Shown: piece after piece, positions 5,462-60,173 of the stretch
How the letters are laid out: the number at the start of each line of letters is the position of its first letter
Numbering within the stretch: position 1 is the stretch's first letter
IMG/VR virus record: IMGVR_UViG_3300042923_000569
Span: 248,001-312,000 of that record
Direction: 5' to 3' (one strand)
DNA length: 64,000 nucleotides
Notes under the pieces: model-generated
The model's database searches: none
What the model was told of the DNA's origin: nothing
The model's input: the letters and a program-made list of their open reading frames with translations, nothing else
Program-made: the position numbers and the translations under genes

Positions 5462-6262
5462 TTATTGAACAGAAACGCTAGATAAAGTTGAAGATAGCCA
5501 GGTCAAATCGTCTTTAGCTTCTGATAGATTATTAACATTAGCTAAAATGTGACGGGCAACGAATTCATTCCACGAGTACCGTTGGTCACTACGCCCAGCC
5601 CATTTAACTACACGACGCCAGCCCAAACGACAAGGATCATATGAACGTAGTTCATTACTGGTCATAGTAGGTCGAACAGCACCAAAGATTTTAATTTGGT
5701 CTTCAGTACTGATAATAGTTGCACCAAATGCTTCAAACAAAGTAGCCTTAAAGCTAACCAATTGATTAAAAGAAGTTTCCGATACGTTCAAATTACTCCA
5801 GTTATCAATGAATGCTTTTGCTAGTTCAACATCTTTCTTTTCACCAACAATCTCACCGAAAAAATGTCCTCGGTGAGTAGAGTTAGAATTCGTAAGAAGA
5901 CTAATAATCTGTTCAGTACTCAATGCTTGTTGATAAATTAATGTAACAATATCGTATGAAATTTCTGCTTGACGTTCAATAAGATACTCAATACTTTCTT
6001 CATCTAATTTACAATTACTAATAACATAATCGATATATAGATTAGTTCCTTCAGTTAATATAAGGAAAATTTGTAAAGGGATTGGATCTTTTACCATTGA
6101 CAATACATCAGAATTATATAACTGCATATATTCATCTGGATTGAGATTTGATGCTAGTTGGATTAATTCTTCTACTGAAATTGGCGAATCTATTTTATAT
6201 TTTAAAAGGTTATTAGCAACTTCATTAATACTAACTTCCTTAGTAATATTTAAACGTGGCAT
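5462..6262 (-). CDS. hypothetical protein, DPCxxGxR paralog family
   Basis: SYDPCRLGWRRVVKW motif. Confidence 0.8.
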   Translation of the reverse strand: MPRLNITKEVSINEVANNLLKYKIDSPISVEELIQLASNLNPDEYMQLYNSDVLSMVKDPIPLQIFLILTEGTNLYIDYVISNCKLDEESIEYLIERQAEISYDIVTLIYQQALSTEQIISLLTNSNSTHRGHFFGEIVGEKKDVELAKAFIDNWSNLNVSETSFNQLVSFKATLFEAFGATIISTEDQIKIFGAVRPTMTSNELRSYDPCRLGWRRVVKWAGRSDQRYSWNEFVARHILANVNNLSEAKDDLTWLSSTLSSVSVQ

Positions 6263-26199: not shown

Positions 26200-27447
26200 T
26201 CACGACACGGCTTCTGTGTCAAGCCTAGAAATGAATTCTTCGGCATTATCTTTACATTCCAAGAAAAGTGCTTGTAAATCACAACCAGCTTTCGTTGAGA
26301 ATGTAATATCAGGTATATTTGCATCAGGGTACATTAGTTTAATATATTCCTTGATTTCAATATCTTCTAGATATGGTATTTCATATATATAATCAACCCT
26401 TCCTTTACGCACTACTGCTGGATCAACTTTTTCAAGATGGTTAGTAGTTAAGAAGATGATAGTACCGTTCAACGAAATCACACCATCTAGTACATTAAGA
26501 ATTTTTGATAGGCTTAACATTTCCATATCAAAGATATTATCGGATTGTGCTTTTGTTTCACGGTCATGAACTGCACTACATGAATCAAAGTCTTCAATCA
26601 GTACTATACTATTAGGTGGAATAGTACTCATTGCTTTTTCAAATGATTTATTACTCATAGTTGATAAATCAATGATACAAATATTTTTATTAAAGTTAGA
26701 TGCAATTGCTTTAATAGTACTACTCTTACCAGTGCCAGGTTTTCCATGTAAAATATAAGTTTGTTTACATGCTAGACCACGAGATGTGTACCAATCAGGA
26801 TTACTATAGAAGTACTCTAGGTTTTCTAGAATTTTATCTTTAATTTCTTTTTTGAGAATTACAGAAGATAATGGACGCTTCTTAACACTTGTCAAGTACT
26901 TCCAGTCTTCACCAGCAATTGTATAAATTCCCATATCGTCTTTCTTTGGTTTATATGCGAAGTCCTGTATTAATGCCATAATAGGCTTTTGGCTTCGACC
27001 AAAGGTTTTAATTACAATATGTTGCTTTTCTTTTTCTGAACCCTGTGAGTTTAAAGATGTTTTTTCAAACCAGAATAATCTTTTATTATAGAAGAAGAAG
27101 TGTTTACCATACCCTGCACCTACCACGTATGACTCATTATTATCGTTATCACTGTACCAACCGGTATTACCATCAAGAGATAAGTATCTAGACCATTTAG
27201 CATATGGTGATTTTAAAAACCAAGACATAAAAGCTTTAAACTGAGTCTCGTTTCCGGTATGTCCTGCGTTATTAAACTCTAAACTTGTCAGTACCTGTCT
27301 TTTTACAAACATAATAAATGTTGGAATAAACTTTAGACAGTACGTTAATACACCTAATCCCCATAATGAAACTGCCCCTGCTAACCAGGGATAGGTTTTC
27401 ATTGCCAGTACTAACTGTGCGTATAATCCCGCAACAAACTCGAACAT
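26200..27447 (-). CDS. BCS1-like AAA+ ATPase with N-terminal TM segment
   Basis: RPLSSVIL...WYTSRGL...Walker A GKPGTGKS, Walker B VLIEDFD, LNVLDG, TTNH..KVDPAVVRKGRVD. Confidence 0.9.
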   Translation of the reverse strand: MFEFVAGLYAQLVLAMKTYPWLAGAVSLWGLGVLTYCLKFIPTFIMFVKRQVLTSLEFNNAGHTGNETQFKAFMSWFLKSPYAKWSRYLSLDGNTGWYSDNDNNESYVVGAGYGKHFFFYNKRLFWFEKTSLNSQGSEKEKQHIVIKTFGRSQKPIMALIQDFAYKPKKDDMGIYTIAGEDWKYLTSVKKRPLSSVILKKEIKDKILENLEYFYSNPDWYTSRGLACKQTYILHGKPGTGKSSTIKAIASNFNKNICIIDLSTMSNKSFEKAMSTIPPNSIVLIEDFDSCSAVHDRETKAQSDNIFDMEMLSLSKILNVLDGVISLNGTIIFLTTNHLEKVDPAVVRKGRVDYIYEIPYLEDIEIKEYIKLMYPDANIPDITFSTKAGCDLQALFLECKDNAEEFISRLDTEAVS

Positions 27448-32079: not shown

Positions 32080-32090
32080 ATGTGTTTTAG

Positions 32091-32164
32091 TACCCCGTCC
32101 GAGACTCGAACTCGGAACCTTCCGATTAAAAGTCGGATATTCTAACCAATTGAATTAACGAGGC
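32091..32164 (-). tRNA. tRNA-Lys(UUU)
   Basis: TCCGA-CTTTTAA-TCGGA. Confidence 0.92.
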
Positions 32165-40194: not shown

Positions 40195-40222
40195 AATATT
40201 ACCTTTGTGCTTGTTTAATTTG

Positions 40223-40305
40223 AGCGGAATACAGGATTCGAACCTGCGTAAACTATTCGCCTCTTGCTTGGAAGGCAAGTGCTCTACCAACTGAGCTAAT
40301 CCCGC
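40223..40305 (-). tRNA. tRNA-Gly(UCC) with long variable region
   Basis: CTTGC-CTTCCAA-GCAAG; U73; 15-nt variable region AGGCGAATAGTTTAC. Confidence 0.88.
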
Positions 40306-42170: not shown

Positions 42171-42761
42171 TTATTGACCAAACTTGGTCATAGCTTCTTC
42201 TAGTGTATATGAATTTACAACTTTAATAGATGCAACATTGTATATTATTACGAATACTTCACCATTATTAAACTTGTACGTATAAGCATCATACCCAAGT
42301 TGTGTTAATGCACGAACAAATTGCGTCGGATGACTGTTATACCAATCATACCATACTGACATAAGTGCATCATACATACTATCTTCACTCATATAATTAT
42401 CGAGTGCAGTACGAATAGCACGATTTTTGTCTTCGTCCCAATTTGTATATGCTTCATCATCAGGAGTATTCTGTATTAATTTTAGCAGTACTGCCTTGTT
42501 AATTTTCTGACTTTTTGATAGTTCTTTTCTTATTGTCAATTCACATTCATAAATCATACCCGTAGGGGATTTTTCACAATACCCACGTGCAGTAATTGGA
42601 TTAGATGTGAAATATATACCTGGCCCGTATTCATCGTTACCTCTACCAACGAATTCATCGCTGAATTGTGAAATTGGATTTTGTGTACCATGATAATAGT
42701 AACCGGATAGTTTACCTTCCATGATAGAAGATATATCTTCCATCAATTTTTTCATTTGCAT
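42171..42761 (-). CDS. putative ADP-ribosyltransferase-fold protein
   Basis: YYHGT...YGPGIYFTSN...ARGY...LGYDAY...E.FVIIYN (H-Y-E type ART pattern). Confidence 0.65.
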   Translation of the reverse strand: MQMKKLMEDISSIMEGKLSGYYYHGTQNPISQFSDEFVGRGNDEYGPGIYFTSNPITARGYCEKSPTGMIYECELTIRKELSKSQKINKAVLLKLIQNTPDDEAYTNWDEDKNRAIRTALDNYMSEDSMYDALMSVWYDWYNSHPTQFVRALTQLGYDAYTYKFNNGEVFVIIYNVASIKVVNSYTLEEAMTKFGQ

Positions 42762-45026: not shown

Positions 45027-45103
45027 TGGAGGGATACCAGTGGACTCGAACCACCAACGCAAGGATTTCACATCTCCGCTCTACCAATTGAGCTAGGCAA
45101 CCC
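45027..45103 (-). tRNA. atypical tRNA (8-bp acceptor, degenerate anticodon arm, identity unclear)
   Basis: Canonical D and T arms and CCA; anticodon arm GGAGA-TGTGAAA-TCCTT. Confidence 0.6.
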
Positions 45104-45725: not shown

Positions 45726-45731
45726 AAATTG

Positions 45732-45803
45732 CGTTCCCACGGAGACTTGAACTCCGGTTCCATGCGTGAAAGGCATGTGTCCTAACCACTAGACGATGGG
45801 AAC
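45732..45803 (-). tRNA. tRNA-Glu(UUC)
   Basis: CATGC-CTTTCAC-GCATG; G73. Confidence 0.93.
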
Positions 45804-48700: not shown

Positions 48701-50062
48701 TTACCACTCTACACCGACACCAGCACCCCAAAGTACTTCGGACTGTGTGTTGGTACTGACCGTCACTTTCGTGGTTACAGCTTGGTTTACACGAGAACTG
48801 AAGCCTACTGCCACAGCCTGTTCACCATCATAACCACCTACGCCTGCACCCAGCATGAAATTACCATCGCGGGTTACCTGGGGAATGTTCGCCATAGCAC
48901 CGGCACCGGCAATACCTGCACTTGCAAGTTTACGGTTATCGCCCATACGTTTATCAATATCAGAGAAACGTTTGTTATTTTTGTAATCGCTGTTGTTCAT
49001 GCGATCTTCAACTTTACCAATACGCTGAGTGTTACTGGTGATACGTTCGTCATGATCAACCAGAGTACTGTCATTGTTATCGATACGTTTACTTAACACA
49101 GCATCAGCACTTTTACGCGACGATGTTTCAGCAGTTACTGAGCGTTGTACAGAAGATACCGCAGCGGTACGTTCAGTACTTTCATCGTTGATCTGTTGTG
49201 CCAATGCTTTATCTGCGTTACCACGAGTAGTGGATTCAGACTGTAATGCATTATCCTGACGTTGTTGATCTTTCAGGAAGGTATTATTATCTACCTTAGT
49301 ACTGATAACAACGTTTTGCTGGTCATCCGTAATACGCTGTTCAGCTTTGTTTTTGTCGATATTGCTTTGCAGCATTTTATCGCCAGAAACACGCTCGGAT
49401 TTTTCAACAATAAGTGCATTACTATTGTCCTGTCCCAGCCGAACACCAATATCAGCAGTGTTTTGTGCATTGATCGCATTGTTGTTGGCATTCTGACCAA
49501 TTTCAATTGCAGTCTGTGCATTATTACCTGCGTTGATTGCATTGTTATTTGCATTATGTGCCAGGTCTTTTGCTTCTTCAACACCGGCTTGTGCAGTGAT
49601 TGCCTTGTTATCGGCTGCCTGACCAATTTCAATTGCAGTTTGTGCATTGGTCATTGCATTGTTAGCGGTGTTTTGTGCATCGCTGGCTTTATTAAAAGCG
49701 TTATGACCGATGTTTTTTGCTTCTTCAACACCTGTCTGACGTTCACTGATTTCTTTCTGAAGTGCATTGTCCTGACGTTGTTGATCAACCTGGAAAACGC
49801 TCTTATCAAGTTTATCTTTTTGGAGGTTTGAAACTTGATATTCTAAATTCTTCCCGGCGGCTTCATTGTACTTAGTTTGAATTTCTTTCCACTGAGTTTG
49901 TTCTTCTTTCCATGCACGATCTTTCTCAGCGAGAAGGTTCGCATCTTGTACTTTATCGTAAGCAGTGGGAGTTTTTACACAACCACAACTTGGATCAATT
50001 GAAGTAGCATGTGCAGAAACTGAACATGCAACAATCGCCATTGCAATCAATGTCTTTTTCAT
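48701..50062 (-). CDS. YadA-family trimeric autotransporter adhesin
   Basis: Signal peptide MKKTLIAMAIVACSVSAHA (start reassigned), coiled-coil stalk with repeats, anchor GIAGAGAMANIPQ...GAGVGGYDGEQAVAVG...GAGVGVEW. Confidence 0.9.
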   Translation of the reverse strand: MKKTLIAMAIVACSVSAHATSIDPSCGCVKTPTAYDKVQDANLLAEKDRAWKEEQTQWKEIQTKYNEAAGKNLEYQVSNLQKDKLDKSVFQVDQQRQDNALQKEISERQTGVEEAKNIGHNAFNKASDAQNTANNAMTNAQTAIEIGQAADNKAITAQAGVEEAKDLAHNANNNAINAGNNAQTAIEIGQNANNNAINAQNTADIGVRLGQDNSNALIVEKSERVSGDKMLQSNIDKNKAEQRITDDQQNVVISTKVDNNTFLKDQQRQDNALQSESTTRGNADKALAQQINDESTERTAAVSSVQRSVTAETSSRKSADAVLSKRIDNNDSTLVDHDERITSNTQRIGKVEDRMNNSDYKNNKRFSDIDKRMGDNRKLASAGIAGAGAMANIPQVTRDGNFMLGAGVGGYDGEQAVAVGFSSRVNQAVTTKVTVSTNTQSEVLWGAGVGVEW

Positions 50063-50189
50063 TTTTATTACCCTGGTGTGCCGCCACATTTGGCGTGAGG
50101 TAATAATACCGTGTCGAAACATTTCGGTCAACACATTTTTTAATATAATTCAAAGAAAACTTAACCCAAATTTACATTAAAAAAGATAT

Positions 50190-51125: not shown

Positions 51126-51374
51126 TTATTCTTCAGTTTGTTCTGGCATATTATGGTATTTGAAATTACCATGTTTATCTTTTGCCGTGTAACGATCATA
51201 AGTTCCTGGATAGGATGACTTAATTGATTGTTCACGTGCGACCGCAGGGTTAATAAAAGTTACATCAGTTTTAATGTAATCTTTAAATTCTTTTTTCTTT
51301 TGTTCAAAAAGAACAGCAGTACTTTCAATGAAGTTATAAAACTTCATAGTAAGGTTTAATAGGTAATTAAACAT
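51126..51374 (-). CDS. hypothetical protein
   Basis: Start reassigned to MFNYL (GAGG SD). Confidence 0.65.
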   Translation of the reverse strand: MFNYLLNLTMKFYNFIESTAVLFEQKKKEFKDYIKTDVTFINPAVAREQSIKSSYPGTYDRYTAKDKHGNFKYHNMPEQTEE

Positions 51375-51389
51375 ATAATCCTCTGTAAT

Positions 51390-51513
51390 TGGCGGCGAGT
51401 ACTGGATTCGAACCAGTGACCAGGACATTAAAAGTGTATGAGTTATGGTTGCTGCGGGAATCCAATCAGGATTCCTTGGGTTCTACCTGCTCTACCAACT
51501 GAGCTAACTCGCC
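51390..51513 (-). ncRNA. tRNA-Lys(UUU) interrupted by a 48-nt GAAUC/CAGCAA module (RNA I)
   Basis: Removing 51438-51485 gives a 76-nt cloverleaf with GGACA-CTTTTAA-TGTCC and CCA. Confidence 0.88.
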
Positions 51514-51520
51514 TATATTT

Positions 51521-51877
51521 TTAACGAATAAGTACTAAAGTATTATTTTTAGCCAGCTCATTCACATCATAATTATCAAGTAGTTGATCAAGTGATTCAA
51601 CTAAGATAATTGGATTTTCGGTACTTTCGCTTACATCAACCAAGCTTTCTTTAATTTCCAAGAAATCTTGTACATATGGTTCACTGATAACACTATTATA
51701 CTCAGATGCATAATAAGTTACAGTTTTGTTGACACGCAAATTAAGTAATGTTCCTACAAAATCATGAATATCATTTGGTTTACCAATTAAAGTAAACTTC
51801 ATACCAAGATCTTTTTTAGAACAAATATCAGATGCAATATCTTGATATGCATGTTCTGCCATTTTAATATTTAACAT
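51521..51877 (-). CDS. hypothetical protein
   Basis: ORF with AAGGA SD. Confidence 0.7.
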   Translation of the reverse strand: MLNIKMAEHAYQDIASDICSKKDLGMKFTLIGKPNDIHDFVGTLLNLRVNKTVTYYASEYNSVISEPYVQDFLEIKESLVDVSESTENPIILVESLDQLLDNYDVNELAKNNTLVLIR

Positions 51878-51885
51878 TGTTATCC

Positions 51886-52245
51886 TTAGCTACGATTAGG
51901 TCGTGAATTTTTAATTAACTCAATGCCTGCATCAGTACATTTTTTAATATTCTGTTCGTACAGATTATCAACAACATCGGTATCTGAACTGTGAAGATAA
52001 ATCTGTTTCAGATTAGGAAACAGACCCCGCTTAAAGCGATATGTCATCATCGTTAGAATCTGACCACCAGTACGCCCACCTGAACCAGACAAGAAATTAT
52101 CCAAATGAACAACTTCGATTTCTGAAGCATTATCAAAGATAAAATTCTTTGCTTCCCACCACTCTTTCAACCAAACAATACCGTCTGATTGTTCAGCACT
52201 AAGGTGATTAGCTGGATTCCGAATATCATCTACATAGACTTTCAT
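51886..52245 (-). CDS. cyclic-phosphate-processing receiver-like domain protein
   Basis: MKVYVDDIRNP...W...EVVHLDNFL...TG...IYLHSS. Confidence 0.7.
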   Translation of the reverse strand: MKVYVDDIRNPANHLSAEQSDGIVWLKEWWEAKNFIFDNASEIEVVHLDNFLSGSGGRTGGQILTMMTYRFKRGLFPNLKQIYLHSSDTDVVDNLYEQNIKKCTDAGIELIKNSRPNRS

Positions 52246-52607
52246 TCGTGATTCTCCAGGCTATTAGCAATCAGTTCGATTCCAACTGCTTTTAGTAATT
52301 CAAAACAATTATCGAACATCATGTTAACCAAATCAGCATCAGATGAATGAAGATAAATCTGCTTGAGCTTAGGCCAAGTACTACCATCTCCCCACATCCA
52401 ATCACCAGCAACCATATAAAACAGATCCTGACCAGTAAGTTCAGGTTCATCCATATAGTTATCGAAATGGATCACTTCGATTTCAGCGGCATTTGCAATC
52501 AGGAAACTTCTTGATTCCCACCATTCTTTCAGCCAAACAATACCTTCTGACTGTTCAGGGGTAAGATGATTAACCGGATTGCGAATATCATCAATAAAGA
52601 CTTTCAT
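52242..52607 (-). CDS. cyclic-phosphate-processing receiver-like domain protein (tandem paralog)
   Basis: MKVFIDDIRNP...EVIHFDNYM...TG...IYLHSS. Confidence 0.7.
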   Translation of the reverse strand: MKVFIDDIRNPVNHLTPEQSEGIVWLKEWWESRSFLIANAAEIEVIHFDNYMDEPELTGQDLFYMVAGDWMWGDGSTWPKLKQIYLHSSDADLVNMMFDNCFELLKAVGIELIANSLENHE

Positions 52608-53678: not shown

Positions 53679-53692
53679 GATATTACCATTTG

Positions 53693-53803
53693 TGCAAGGT
53701 GCAGGATTCGAACCTGCGTTACGTTCTTGAAATGAAAGTTATGTATGCCGTAAGATTCCATCTGGAATCGCTTTTCGTGTCCTAACCACTAGACGAACCT
53801 TGC
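53693..53803 (-). ncRNA. tRNA-Glu(UUC) interrupted by a 39-nt GAAUC/CGGCAU module (RNA J)
   Basis: Removing 53737-53775 gives a cloverleaf with CGTTC-ATTTCAA-GAACG and a Glu-type D-arm TCGTCTAGTGGTTAGGAC. Confidence 0.85.
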
Positions 53804-60098: not shown

Positions 60099-60173
60099 TG
60101 GTGCCCCTGACAGGATTCGAACCCGCGAATCACGGTTTTAGGGACCGCTGTTCTACCATAGAACGGCAGGGGC
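60099..60173 (-). tRNA. amber suppressor-like tRNA (CUA)
   Basis: GCGGT-CCCTAAA-ACCGT; full cloverleaf and CCA; C8 and C33 are non-canonical. Confidence 0.75.

What the first reader, a model, noticed from the sequence alone, without database searches (positions are those of the whole stretch)
51390..51513. tRNA-Lys(UUU) with a 48-nt insertion exactly between nucleotides 28 and 29
Seen: GGCGAGT-TA-GCTCAGTTGGTAGAGC-A-GG|TAGAACCCAA-GGAATCC-TGATT-GGATTCC-CGCAGCAACCATAACTCAT|ACA-CTTTTAA-TGTCC-TGGTC-ACTGGTTCGAATCCAGT-ACTCGCC-GCCA. Deleting the insert restores a perfect 5-bp anticodon stem and a 76-nt tRNA. An uninterrupted Lys(UUU) gene exists at 32091. Established: bacterial tRNA introns are self-splicing and much longer. 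Inference: either a novel protein-spliced mini-intron giving conditional tRNA production, or an unspliced tRNA decoy with a protein handle.
Basis: partly seen in the sequence, partly recalled or inferred. Interest (0 to 1): 0.88.

Follow-up and report, generated by a model that had tools for sequence, protein, structure and literature searches.

The report
Handle-bearing tRNA mimic in jumbo phage
The interrupted tRNA-Lys gene is real and is one member of a large, conserved and apparently undescribed family of phage tRNA-like RNAs that carry a 40-50-base module in the anticodon arm and travel with a Ro60-like RNA-binding protein and RNA-repair enzymes, so it is more likely a Y-RNA-like "tRNA with a protein handle" than a spliced intron, although splicing is not excluded.

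Summary
At 51390-51513 (- strand) a complete tRNA-Lys(UUU) body is interrupted by 48 nt exactly between positions 28 and 29.

It is not a one-off and not a pseudogene. A covariance model finds at least 45 distinct relatives:
- a second one in this window, Glu(UUC) at 53690-53803;
- 3-4 per genome in Rak2/GAP32-like jumbo phages;
- at least 5 in KVP40-like vibriophages, some annotated there as "tRNA-Pseudo";
- others in unrelated viral contigs and Lachnospiraceae MAG contigs.

All carry the same module: an A-rich linker, a covarying 7-bp hairpin, and an invariant C-N-G-C-A. It sits in the anticodon arm of tRNA bodies of about a dozen isotypes.

Module-bearing genes often lie directly upstream of a DUF2828+DUF7788 protein whose predicted fold matches Ro60/TROVE. 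All module-bearing phage groups examined encode this protein. In the window's own phage it sits between an RNA ligase and a 2H phosphoesterase. Some relatives are circularly permuted like YrlA Y RNAs, or lack a D arm and anticodon arm.

Best reading (about 0.5): an unspliced, Y-RNA-like tRNA mimic whose module docks the Ro-like protein in an RNA-repair or counter-defence particle. Main rival (about 0.25): a protein-spliced mini-intron. No transcript data were available.

The parts
51390..51513 (-). Whole 124-nt tRNA-Lys(UUU)-like gene with internal module and encoded CCA
   Evidence: Rfam tRNA 47 bits; family model R1 132.8 bits
51486..51513 (-). 5' body, tRNA positions 1-28: acceptor 5' strand, D arm, and G27-G28 of the anticodon stem
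51438..51485 (-). 48-nt insert: A/C-rich linker, hairpin, C-N-G-C-A motif, 3' linker
   Evidence: Unique best insert position 28/29; module-only model R2 hit at 51446-51481, 37.1 bits
51457..51475 (-). Module hairpin: 7 bp with a 5-nt loop
   Evidence: All 7 pairs show changes on both sides across 45 distinct members, 91% of cells paired; second loop nucleotide is G in 44/45
51450..51454 (-). CAGCA motif; C, G, C and A are invariant in 45/45 family members
51423..51437 (-). Anticodon mini-hairpin (ACA / CUUUUAA / UGU) plus C42-C43, which pair with G27-G28 across the insert
   Evidence: helix 5: 94% paired; helix 3: 78%
51390..51422 (-). Variable loop, T arm, acceptor 3' strand, G73 and CCA
53690..53803 (-). 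Second family member in the window: tRNA-Glu(UUC) body with a 41-nt module (module at 53742-53776)
   Evidence: R1 79.2 bits; R2 31.4 bits; missed by ARAGORN and by Rfam at gathering score
51886..52245 (-). cRec (cyclic-phosphate processing Receiver-like) protein A, upstream of the interrupted tRNA-Lys
   Evidence: Pfam PF20274, 39.8 bits against a cut-off of 27; conserved beside the tRNA in all 18 related phage records
52242..52607 (-). cRec protein B, a paralogue of A
   Evidence: Pfam PF20274, 34.5 bits
51521..51877 (-). 118-aa ORF of unknown function between the cRec pair and the tRNA; specific to this phage lineage
   Evidence: No Pfam hit; only a self-match in IMG/VR
32090..32164 (-). 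Uninterrupted tRNA-Lys(UUU), which makes the interrupted copy redundant for decoding
45731..45803 (-). Uninterrupted tRNA-Glu(UUC), redundant with the interrupted Glu copy

Best explanation
The 124-nt gene encodes a stable tRNA-derived non-coding RNA. It has a complete tRNA-Lys body, and its anticodon arm is turned into a three-way junction by a conserved 48-nt module: an A-rich linker, a 7-bp hairpin with a conserved loop G, an invariant C-N-G-C-A and a 3' linker. I propose that the RNA is not spliced. I propose that the module is the docking site for the phage's Ro60-like protein (DUF2828 + vWA-like DUF7788). The tRNA body, with its open acceptor end and exposed anticodon loop, would be what tRNA-recognising enzymes or host tRNA nucleases see. 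The resulting particle would be the phage counterpart of the bacterial Ro60/Y-RNA (Rsr-YrlA) particle. It would work with the phage RNA ligase, 2H phosphoesterase and cRec proteins in tRNA/RNA repair or in countering tRNA-targeting host defences.

Shown here: the structure, its conservation and covariation, the size of the family, the gene linkage, and the Ro60-like fold of the partner protein. Inferred: that the Ro-like protein binds the module, that the RNA stays unspliced, and the biological role.
For: 1. The family is conserved, so this is not decay. Model R1 finds at least 45 distinct long members. On that alignment 94.6% of cells are paired against 64.5% in shuffles. The covariation score is 0.746, against 0.204 in shuffles and 0.07-0.13 in slid controls. 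C-N-G-C-A is invariant and the loop G is present in 44/45.

2. Linkage to a Ro-like gene. The module RNAs lie directly upstream of a DUF2828+DUF7788 gene on the same strand in L166, L117, L161, L097, L024, L026, L066 and L077. In L043 one ordinary tRNA lies between them. In L028 and L030 the gene is within 2 kb but upstream of the module RNA. In three Lachnospiraceae loci (L161, L097, L117) 3-4 module copies lie in tandem upstream of it. L166 has four long tRNA-like genes in tandem there.

3. Genome co-occurrence. All 18 Rak2-like records that carry the interrupted tRNA-Lys, and KVP40-like phages, encode the protein. The window's own contig encodes it in the order RNA ligase, Ro-like protein, 2H phosphoesterase.

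4. Fold. An AlphaFold model (pLDDT 80.7) has Ro60/TROVE structures as its seven best PDB matches: 9kop at E 4.7e-7, then 2nvo, 2i91, 1yvp and 9nep.

5. Members that excision could not turn into tRNAs. L042, L047 and L055 are circularly permuted. Their ends form the module hairpin and the acceptor stem is closed. They give sub-threshold Rfam YrlA hits of 38.2, 36.0 and 32.5 bits. The fourth copies in L161 and L097 lack a D arm and anticodon arm. In KVP40 Pseudo-5 the best excision leaves a 7-nt loop without U33.

6. Anticodon identity drifts between orthologues with the same body: UUU to GAU (Yen9-03), UUC to GUC, and GAU to GAA.

7. Uninterrupted Lys(UUU) and Glu(UUC) genes exist in the same window.

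8. A preprint on phage Bas63 (PMC11482910) found that a Ro60-like protein encoded beside the tRNA array counters a defence system. It speculated that some of the 'tRNAs' are Y RNAs.
Against: - No transcript, binding or processing data exist.
- In this phage and its relatives the Ro-like gene is far from the module RNAs: about 155 kb away on the window's own contig, about 195 kb in BF, GAP32, CBB and XbC2.
- In a protein-anchored sample of 100 Ro-like loci, no module was found beside the gene. Felixounavirus has none either. The link is therefore limited to some clades. Ro-like genes tend to sit near tRNA arrays in any case.
- Enrichment in the RNA-anchored sample is modest under strict counting (7/14 against 9/49, p = 0.03). 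It reaches p = 5e-4 only when the permuted forms are counted.
- Most members keep a canonical anticodon arm once the insert is removed, and the split 2+3-bp stem covaries. That pattern is what a spliced product would need.
- The module does not resemble the known Ro60-binding helix of Y RNAs, and Rfam YrlA is not matched in the window.
Confidence: 0.5

Rival explanations
1. The insert is a true protein-dependent tRNA intron. The module is the splice signal. An unidentified endonuclease, possibly recruited by the Ro-like protein, cuts at both junctions. The 2H phosphoesterase and/or cRec proteins heal the ends. The phage RNA ligase seals the nick in the anticodon stem, giving a 76-nt tRNA-Lys(UUU). 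That would give phages a counterpart of the archaeal trio of intron, split gene and permuted gene.
For: - Removing one contiguous insert restores a 5-bp stem and a 7-nt loop with U33 and R37 in about 40 of 52 members.
- The insert position varies (28/29, 29/30, 30/31, 31/32, and probably 38/39 in KVP40 Pseudo-4), yet the restored arm is always canonical.
- Both sub-helices covary, although 2 bp and 3 bp are too short to be stable alone. The minimum-free-energy fold of the 124-mer does not form them.
- The tRNA bodies match their anticodons in the Glu- and Thr-type members.
- The needed enzymes are present: RNA ligase and 2H phosphoesterase flanking the Ro-like gene, and a cRec pair beside the interrupted tRNAs.
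- Two of the three permuted forms keep an encoded CCA in the closed acceptor loop.
Against: - No endonuclease candidate was found.
- There is no bulge-helix-bulge motif and no conserved junction nucleotide. The linkers are A/C-rich and not complementary, and linker lengths vary (5-12 nt and 8-13 nt), so there is no obvious ruler.
- Some conserved members could not give a tRNA.
- Anticodons switch between orthologues.
- The interrupted genes duplicate uninterrupted ones.
- G73 replaces the A73 found in the phage's two ordinary tRNA-Lys genes.
- GAP32 and the GUA-type members have a bulged T stem.
Confidence: 0.25
2. The RNA is an anticodon-nuclease decoy or sentinel that works without any Ro-like binding. 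The exposed Lys, Glu, Asn, Asp, His or Tyr-type anticodon loops would soak up or report host tRNA nucleases. The module would only block use on the ribosome or stabilise the RNA.
For: - The isotypes are rich in families that known anticodon nucleases target (general knowledge): the xm5s2U family (Lys, Glu, Gln) and the queuosine family (Asn, Asp, His, GUA).
- The anticodon loop changes between orthologues while loop geometry is kept.
- Ordinary copies of the same isoacceptors coexist.
Against: - It does not explain the invariant C-N-G-C-A, the loop G or the linkage to the Ro-like gene.
- Members without an anticodon arm exist.
- This reading overlaps with the best explanation and does not exclude it.
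Confidence: 0.12
3. The insert is a small self-cleaving or self-splicing ribozyme, or the footprint of a mobile DNA element, inside a tRNA gene that is now a pseudogene.
For: KVP40, BF and other records annotate relatives as pseudo-tRNAs. HNH homing endonuclease genes occur nearby in some relatives. One lineage (XbC2, Kaldavass) shows an imprecise loss of the module.
Against: - No Rfam ribozyme or intron family matches, even at E up to 1.
- 48 nt is too short for a group I or group II core.
- Strong covariation across all helices and conserved synteny over divergent phages argue against a pseudogene.
- The fixed orientation and position within the tRNA argue for an RNA-level function.
Confidence: 0.05

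Closest known systems
YrlA-type bacterial/phage Y RNAs with Ro60 (Rsr) (Rfam RF02553; Chen et al. 2014, PMC4201824)
   Same: A tRNA-like RNA (acceptor, D and T arms) carrying an extra protein-binding element at the anticodon-arm position. The genes often lie next to a Ro60-fold protein, in the setting of RNA ligase and end-healing enzymes. Permuted relatives (L042, L047, L055) have the YrlA topology and weak YrlA hits.
   Different: The window's RNA is in normal tRNA order, with an open acceptor end, encoded CCA and an intact anticodon loop. The module is internal, whereas in YrlA the RNA ends form the Ro-binding stem. No YrlA hit in the window. The partner is a DUF2828/DUF7788 protein, not a Pfam TROVE protein. 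The module sequence is unlike the Ro60-binding helix. In this phage the RNA genes and the Ro-like gene are about 155 kb apart.
Archaeal/eukaryal protein-spliced tRNA introns, including non-canonical positions and permuted genes (PMC4090602)
   Same: A short insert in the anticodon arm at variable positions. Removing it restores a canonical tRNA. Intron-like and permuted gene forms share one motif. Ligase and cyclic-phosphate enzymes are present.
   Different: No bulge-helix-bulge motif. The conserved sequence lies inside the insert. No splicing endonuclease was identified. The hosts are bacteria and phages.
Group I introns in bacterial and phage tRNA genes (PMC3984707)
   Same: They interrupt tRNA genes in the anticodon region in bacteria and phages.
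   Different: Those are over 200 nt, self-splicing, and lie in the anticodon loop. Here the insert is 38-51 nt, lies in the stem, and has no ribozyme core.
KVP40 'tRNA-Pseudo-3/4/5' and the 'tRNA-OTHER/Undet/Pseudo' features of BF, CBB, fHe-Yen9 and Kaldavass
   Same: They are members of the same family by model R1.
   Different: They were deposited as pseudogenes or mis-typed tRNAs (Phe, Asn, Lys) with no comment on the shared module. Two KVP40 members (L011:5256-5378 and 5643-5768) carry no tRNA annotation in the record.
'Enigmatic' tRNA introns of Lak megaphages (PMC6784885)
   Same: Conserved inserts in tRNA genes of huge phages, with an unknown removal mechanism. A Lak genome also has a weak DUF2828 match (Lak-B7, 23.8% identity).
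   Different: I did not compare the Lak intron sequences or positions, so the relationship is unknown.
Phage T4 stable RNAs species 1 and 2 (rnaC, rnaD)
   Same: Stable RNAs of unknown function encoded within a phage tRNA cluster. rnaC has a T arm.
   Different: Neither is matched by R1, and no module is visible.

Membership tests
tRNA (Rfam RF00005) | Cloverleaf scoring at or above the gathering score | tested here: met
   47 bits against 29, model positions 1-71, but with 63 nt in place of the 15-nt anticodon arm. ARAGORN does not call it.
tRNA (functional decoder) | Contiguous 5-bp anticodon stem with a 7-nt loop in the mature RNA | not testable with these tools
   This is met only if the 48-nt insert is removed. 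No RNA data were available.
Group I / group II self-splicing intron | Ribozyme core detectable by covariance model; length over 200 nt | tested here: not met
   No Rfam hit at E up to 1 in 51300-51600 other than tRNA. The insert is 48 nt.
Small self-cleaving ribozymes (hammerhead, twister, pistol, hatchet, hairpin) | Match to the Rfam family model | tested here: not met
   The order of GAAA and CUGA elements does not fit a hammerhead (by inspection).
Archaeal-type BHB tRNA intron | Bulge-helix-bulge: two 3-nt bulges that hold the splice sites, separated by 4 bp | tested here: not met
   By inspection of the junctions in the window and in BF. Both linkers are A/C-rich and not complementary to each other or to the exon ends.
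Archaeal-type BHB tRNA intron | Splicing endonuclease (EndA/Sen) encoded or available | not tested
   Only 30 window ORFs and a few ORFs from related loci were scanned with Pfam. None was an endonuclease of that family.
YrlA Y RNA (Rfam RF02553) | Score at or above the gathering score (69 bits) | tested here: not met
   No hit in the window region at E up to 1. No gathering-level hit in nine loci with a module RNA beside a Ro-like gene, nor in the Ro-like loci L338 and L300. Permuted relatives reach only 32.5-38.2 bits.
YrlA Y RNA | Permuted topology: the RNA ends form the protein-binding stem and the acceptor stem is closed | tested here: not met
   The window RNA is in tRNA order with an open acceptor and CCA. 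The feature is met by family relatives L042, L047 and L055.
Y RNA / Ro60 system (functional class) | Gene encoded next to, or together with, a Ro60-fold protein | tested here: inconclusive
   Directly adjacent in at least 8 independent loci, and within 2 kb in 3 more. The same genome but about 155 kb apart in the window's phage. A protein-anchored sample was negative.
Y RNA / Ro60 system (functional class) | Physical binding of the RNA by the Ro60-like protein | not testable with these tools
   This needs RIP, EMSA or a structure.
Ro60/TROVE-vWA proteins (the partner, DUF2828+DUF7788) | Ro60-like fold | tested here: met
   The seven best Foldseek matches in the PDB are all Ro60/TROVE, E 4.7e-7 to 3.3e-5. 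Sequence profile against the PDB is only E 0.62. The Pfam families are DUF2828 and DUF7788, not TROVE.
Module-bearing tRNA family (defined here, models R1 and R2) | tRNA scaffold, covarying hairpin and invariant C-N-G-C-A in the anticodon arm | tested here: met
   R1 132.8 bits and R2 37.1 bits. This test is partly circular, because the window sequence is a seed of both models.

The most novel reading that the evidence does not exclude
Phages, and some bacteria, possess a protein-dependent tRNA splicing system that does not depend on the archaeal/eukaryal BHB machinery. A about 45-nt module (hairpin plus C-N-G-C-A) marks introns at variable positions in the anticodon arm and also marks the ends of circularly permuted tRNA genes. 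A Ro60-like ring protein recognises the module. Cutting, end-healing (2H, cRec) and ligation then produce working tRNAs only when the phage's own machinery is expressed. Phage tRNA supply would thus be conditional and hidden from host tRNA nucleases.
Probability: 0.2. Interest if true: 0.95.

Novelty: new variant of a known kind. Interest (0 to 1): 0.8.

Why it matters
Large phages carry tRNA arrays whose odd members are routinely filed as pseudogenes. This analysis shows that one class of these oddities is a conserved RNA family spread across very different phages: Rak2-like jumbo phages, T4-like vibriophages and Lachnospiraceae-associated elements. The family is tied to a Ro60-like protein found in over 700 phage genomes, and that protein's RNA partners are unknown. 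If the best reading is right, it supplies the missing RNA component of a widespread phage Ro-like particle. It would also link that particle to tRNA repair or counter-defence, an area where phage tRNAs and host tRNA nucleases are under active study. If the rival is right, it would be the first protein-dependent tRNA splicing system in bacteria and phages. Either way the question is directly testable in cultured phages (KVP40, GAP32, BF, CBB) and by expression in E. coli K-12. The two covariance models give annotators a way to recognise these genes.

Tried and rejected
- BHB motif, and pairing between the two linkers or between linkers and exons: none found. An apparent complementarity of the 3' linker (UAACUC) to tRNA positions 4-9 holds in the Lys-type, and partly in Kaldavass_b, but not in Glu- or Asn-type members.
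- Rfam ribozyme or intron families: no hits.
- T4 rnaC/rnaD as homologues: not matched.
- KVP40/T4 gene 57B, labelled 'RNA ligase' next to the tRNA cluster: it is an Acb1 anti-CBASS 2H protein, not a ligase.
- cRec as a universal companion: found by tblastn only in the Rak2-like relatives and a few other phages, not in KVP40-likes. In Eowyn there is no tRNA nearby. In Privateer it sits near RtcB.
- The search for related loci with the neighbouring 118-aa ORF returned only the window's own contig.
- A protein-anchored search for modules beside 100 Ro-like genes, and in Felixounavirus, was negative.
- A hand-written regex and hairpin detector for modules was too permissive and was discarded.
- The promoter/terminator scan around the genes did not exceed shuffles.
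- Pfam scans of 30 window ORFs found no nuclease or ligase inside the window.
- Literature searches found no description of this module.

Full report
**Observation.** On the minus strand, 51513 to 51390 reads as a complete tRNA. It has a 7-bp acceptor stem, a D arm, G27-G28, then 48 extra nucleotides. After the insert come ACA, the loop CUUUUAA, UGUCC, a 5-nt variable loop, a T arm, the acceptor 3' strand and GCCA. Rfam's tRNA model aligns it end to end. The score is 47 bits against a gathering score of 29, and 63 nt occupy the place of the 15-nt anticodon arm. ARAGORN misses it. I tested every possible single-insert position. Only 28/29 gives five pairs plus U33 and a purine at position 37. 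An ordinary tRNA-Lys(UUU) lies at 32090-32164. The finder's description is correct in every detail.

**Context.** The window carries 28 tRNA or tRNA-like genes, all on the minus strand, scattered among small ORFs. It comes from a 357,873-bp IMG/VR contig. That contig is related, at 70-76% DNA identity in this region, to the Rak2/GAP32-like jumbo phages: Serratia BF, Erwinia pEa_SNUABM_x and Kaldavass, Yersinia fHe-Yen9, Cronobacter GAP32, Pectobacterium CBB and Xanthomonas XbC2.

**Not a singleton and not a pseudogene.**
- All 18 related records have a 115-127-nt tRNA-like gene in the same syntenic slot. It is annotated variously as tRNA-Lys, -Phe, -OTHER, -Undet or pseudo.
- The alignment shows compensating changes across the split stem: GG+ACA/UGUCC, CG+AGC/GCUCG and GG+GCA/UGCCC.
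- The hairpin arms also swap. GAAUC/GAUUC in the window corresponds to GAUUC/GAAUC in BF.
- A covariance model (R1) then found many more members:
  - a second one in the window at 53690-53803, with a true tRNA-Glu body and anticodon UUC;
  - three or four per genome in the jumbo-phage relatives;
  - at least five in KVP40-like T4-type vibriophages, including KVP40 'tRNA-Pseudo-3/4/5' and two members with no tRNA annotation in the record;
  - members in unrelated IMG/VR contigs.
- A scan of bacterial genome contigs added Lachnospiraceae MAG contigs.
- On 45 distinct sequences, 94.6% of cells are paired, against 64.5% in shuffles. The covariation score is 0.746, against 0.204 in shuffles and 0.07-0.13 when partners are slid.
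- All seven hairpin pairs and all five split-stem pairs show changes on both sides. The alignment was fitted to the model, which inflates these figures somewhat. The slid controls use the same alignment.

**Anatomy of the module.** It is 38-51 nt long and has four parts:
- an A-rich 5' linker (RAAA);
- a 6-10-bp hairpin whose second loop nucleotide is G in 44/45 members;
- two or three nucleotides, then C-N-G-C-A with all four named bases invariant in 45/45 (usually ACAGCAA);
- an 8-13-nt A/U/C-rich 3' linker.

After the insert is removed, the anticodons are Lys UUU, Glu UUC, Gln UUG, Asn GUU, Asp GUC, His GUG, a GUA type, Thr UGU/GGU, Pro UGG, Ala UGC, Ser GGA, Arg UCU, Ile GAU and Phe GAA. 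The position is usually 28/29. In some lineages it is 29/30, 30/31 or 31/32. In KVP40 Pseudo-4 the module probably follows the loop AUGUUAA, which would be 38/39, although one search's scan is equally compatible with positions 33/34-38/39. No junction nucleotide is conserved. There is no bulge-helix-bulge motif. The two linkers cannot pair with each other.

**The turning point: gene linkage.**
- In Lachnospiraceae loci L166 and L161, the module RNAs are immediately followed by a roughly 500-aa protein with Pfam DUF2828 + DUF7788.
- A local tblastn showed the same gene on the same strand directly downstream of module RNAs in L117, L097, L024, L026, L066 and L077. In L043 one ordinary tRNA lies between. 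In L028 and L030 the gene is within 2 kb but upstream of the module RNA.
- A module-only model (R2) found three to four module copies in tandem upstream of the gene in L161, L097 and L117.
- The protein occurs in 711 phage records. It is often annotated 'Ro-like RNA-binding protein' or 'vWFA protein'.
- All 18 jumbo-phage relatives and the KVP40-likes have it.
- The window's own contig encodes it in the order RNA ligase (PF09414), Ro-like protein, 2H 'Swiss-army-knife' phosphoesterase. Ligase and Ro-like protein are likewise linked in BF, GAP32, XbC2 and Munch.
- An AlphaFold model of one family member (pLDDT 80.7) has Ro60/TROVE structures as its seven best PDB matches.
- Next to the interrupted tRNA-Lys, the window encodes two paralogous cRec proteins (PF20274). 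This pair is conserved in all 18 relatives.
- cRec is predicted in the literature to process 2',3'-cyclic phosphate RNA ends or cyclic ADP-ribose, and to be linked to RNA ligases (PMC7824862).

**Family members that argue against simple splicing.**
- L042, L047 and L055 all lie beside Ro-like genes and are circular permutations. The order is 3' half, then a closed acceptor stem (with CCA and a spacer in two of the three), then the 5' half. The transcript ends form the module hairpin, and ACAGCAA follows the 5' end.
- This is the topology of YrlA Y RNAs. Rfam YrlA gives sub-threshold hits of 38.2, 36.0 and 32.5 bits against a gathering score of 69. Two of the three hits cover only the T-arm/acceptor/D-arm core.
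- The fourth copies in L161 and L097 keep the acceptor, module and T arm but have no D arm or anticodon arm. They are conserved between two MAGs.
- Orthologues with identical bodies carry different anticodons. The Lys-type is UUU in most phages but GAU in fHe-Yen9. The Kaldavass/XbC2 type is UUC or GUC. L161 and L097 carry GAU and GAA.
- The interrupted Lys and Glu genes duplicate ordinary ones in the same window.
- The interrupted Lys gene has G73, where both ordinary Lys genes have A73.

**Evidence that keeps splicing alive.**
- About 40 of 52 members regain a textbook anticodon arm when one contiguous piece is removed, whatever its position.
- The 2-bp and 3-bp sub-helices covary, although the minimum-free-energy fold of the 124-mer does not form them.
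- All the enzymes needed after an endonucleolytic cut are encoded: ligase, 2H phosphoesterase and cRec.
- The intron-like and permuted forms share one motif. This recalls archaeal and algal intron-containing and permuted tRNA genes, which share the BHB motif (general knowledge).
- No endonuclease candidate was found, but only a small part of the genome was examined.

**Limits of the linkage argument.**
- Ro-like genes commonly sit beside tRNA arrays. In Felixounavirus tootiki, about 30 ordinary tRNAs follow the gene and there is no module.
- In 100 Ro-like loci chosen through the protein, no module RNA was found. The association is therefore limited to some clades.
- In the RNA-anchored IMG/VR sample, 7 of 14 module loci against 9 of 49 other loci contain the gene (p = 0.03). 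The figures become 10/17 against 6/46 (p = 5e-4) if the three permuted cases are counted as module loci.
- Several negative loci end close to the tRNA, so the gene could lie just outside them.
- The four Lachnospiraceae loci where the gene is immediately adjacent (L097, L117, L161, L166), and the genome-level co-occurrence, add independent weight.

**Conclusion.** The most economical reading is that these are Y-RNA-like tRNA mimics. The module would be the handle for a Ro60-like protein, and the particle would work with RNA ligase and end-healing enzymes in RNA repair or counter-defence. A preprint on phage Bas63 reports that its Ro60-like protein, encoded beside the tRNA array, counters a defence system. 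It speculates that some neighbouring 'tRNAs' are Y RNAs (PMC11482910). Chen et al. 2014 found YrlA next to TROVE-annotated Ro60 in bacteria and phages, but did not describe this non-permuted, anticodon-arm-retaining form (PMC4201824). I found no paper that describes the module. I put about 0.5 on the unspliced Ro-partner model, about 0.25 on protein-dependent splicing, about 0.12 on a decoy independent of the Ro-like protein, and about 0.05 on a ribozyme, mobile-element relic or pseudogene.

Noticed in passing
window 53690-53803 (-): A second module-bearing tRNA, with a tRNA-Glu(UUC) body and a 41-nt insert at 28/29. Both ARAGORN and Rfam at gathering score miss it.
   Followed up: yes
window 51886-52245 (-) and 52242-52607 (-): Two paralogous cRec (PF20274) proteins lie between the two interrupted tRNAs. 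The pair is conserved in all 18 related jumbo-phage records.
   Followed up: yes
window 60102-60173 (-): A tRNA found by Rfam (50.6 bits) but not by ARAGORN. Its anticodon loop is CCCUAAA, which reads as anticodon CUA (amber-suppressor-like) with C33 in place of U33.
   Followed up: no
window 40222-40305 (-); also L040:11042-11126: tRNA-Gly(UCC) of 84 nt with an unusually long variable region for a glycine tRNA. The feature is conserved in Serratia phage BF.
   Followed up: no
window 45027-45103 (-): A weak tRNA (Rfam 35 bits) that ARAGORN calls Ser(UGA). It has a class I length and an irregular anticodon arm, and lies next to a normal tRNA-Ser.
   Followed up: no
window 42171-42761 (-): An ORF with an ART-PolyVal ADP-ribosyltransferase domain (PF18760, 40.3 bits) lies inside the tRNA region.
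   Followed up: no
window 48701-50134 (-): A 477-aa ORF ends in a YadA-like outer-membrane anchor domain (PF03895, 70.3 bits). This is unexpected in a phage genome.
   Followed up: no
window 26200-27447 (-): A BCS1-N + AAA ATPase (415 aa) lies among the tRNA genes.
   Followed up: no
L042:4300-4545, L047:4280-4895, L055:890-1320: Circularly permuted, module-bearing tRNA-like RNAs lie directly upstream of Ro-like genes. L042 also has three GCCGCAAGGC tetraloop hairpins upstream.
   Followed up: partly
L006:2530-2609, L005:2532-2611, L034:9461-9540: In XbC2 and Kaldavass-like phages, one paralogue has lost the hairpin and CAGCA but kept part of the 3' linker. This leaves a 3-bp stem and a 13-14-nt loop, so the module loss was imprecise.
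   Followed up: partly
L002:1008-1134; L001:2222-2350; L004:2008-2136: GAP32's Lys-type member and the GUA-type members of BF and Yen9 all carry a one-nucleotide bulge between T-stem positions 52 and 53.
   Followed up: no
L011:4136-4591 (KVP40 57B): The gene labelled 'RNA ligase' next to the tRNA cluster in the KVP40 and T4 records is an Acb1 anti-CBASS 2H phosphoesterase by Pfam (157.9 bits).
   Followed up: yes
L161 (Acetatifactor MAG, 129-kb contig): The cassette of module RNAs and Ro-like gene is flanked by an EAL-domain protein and a GNAT acetyltransferase. It may therefore be chromosomal and not phage-borne.
   Followed up: partly
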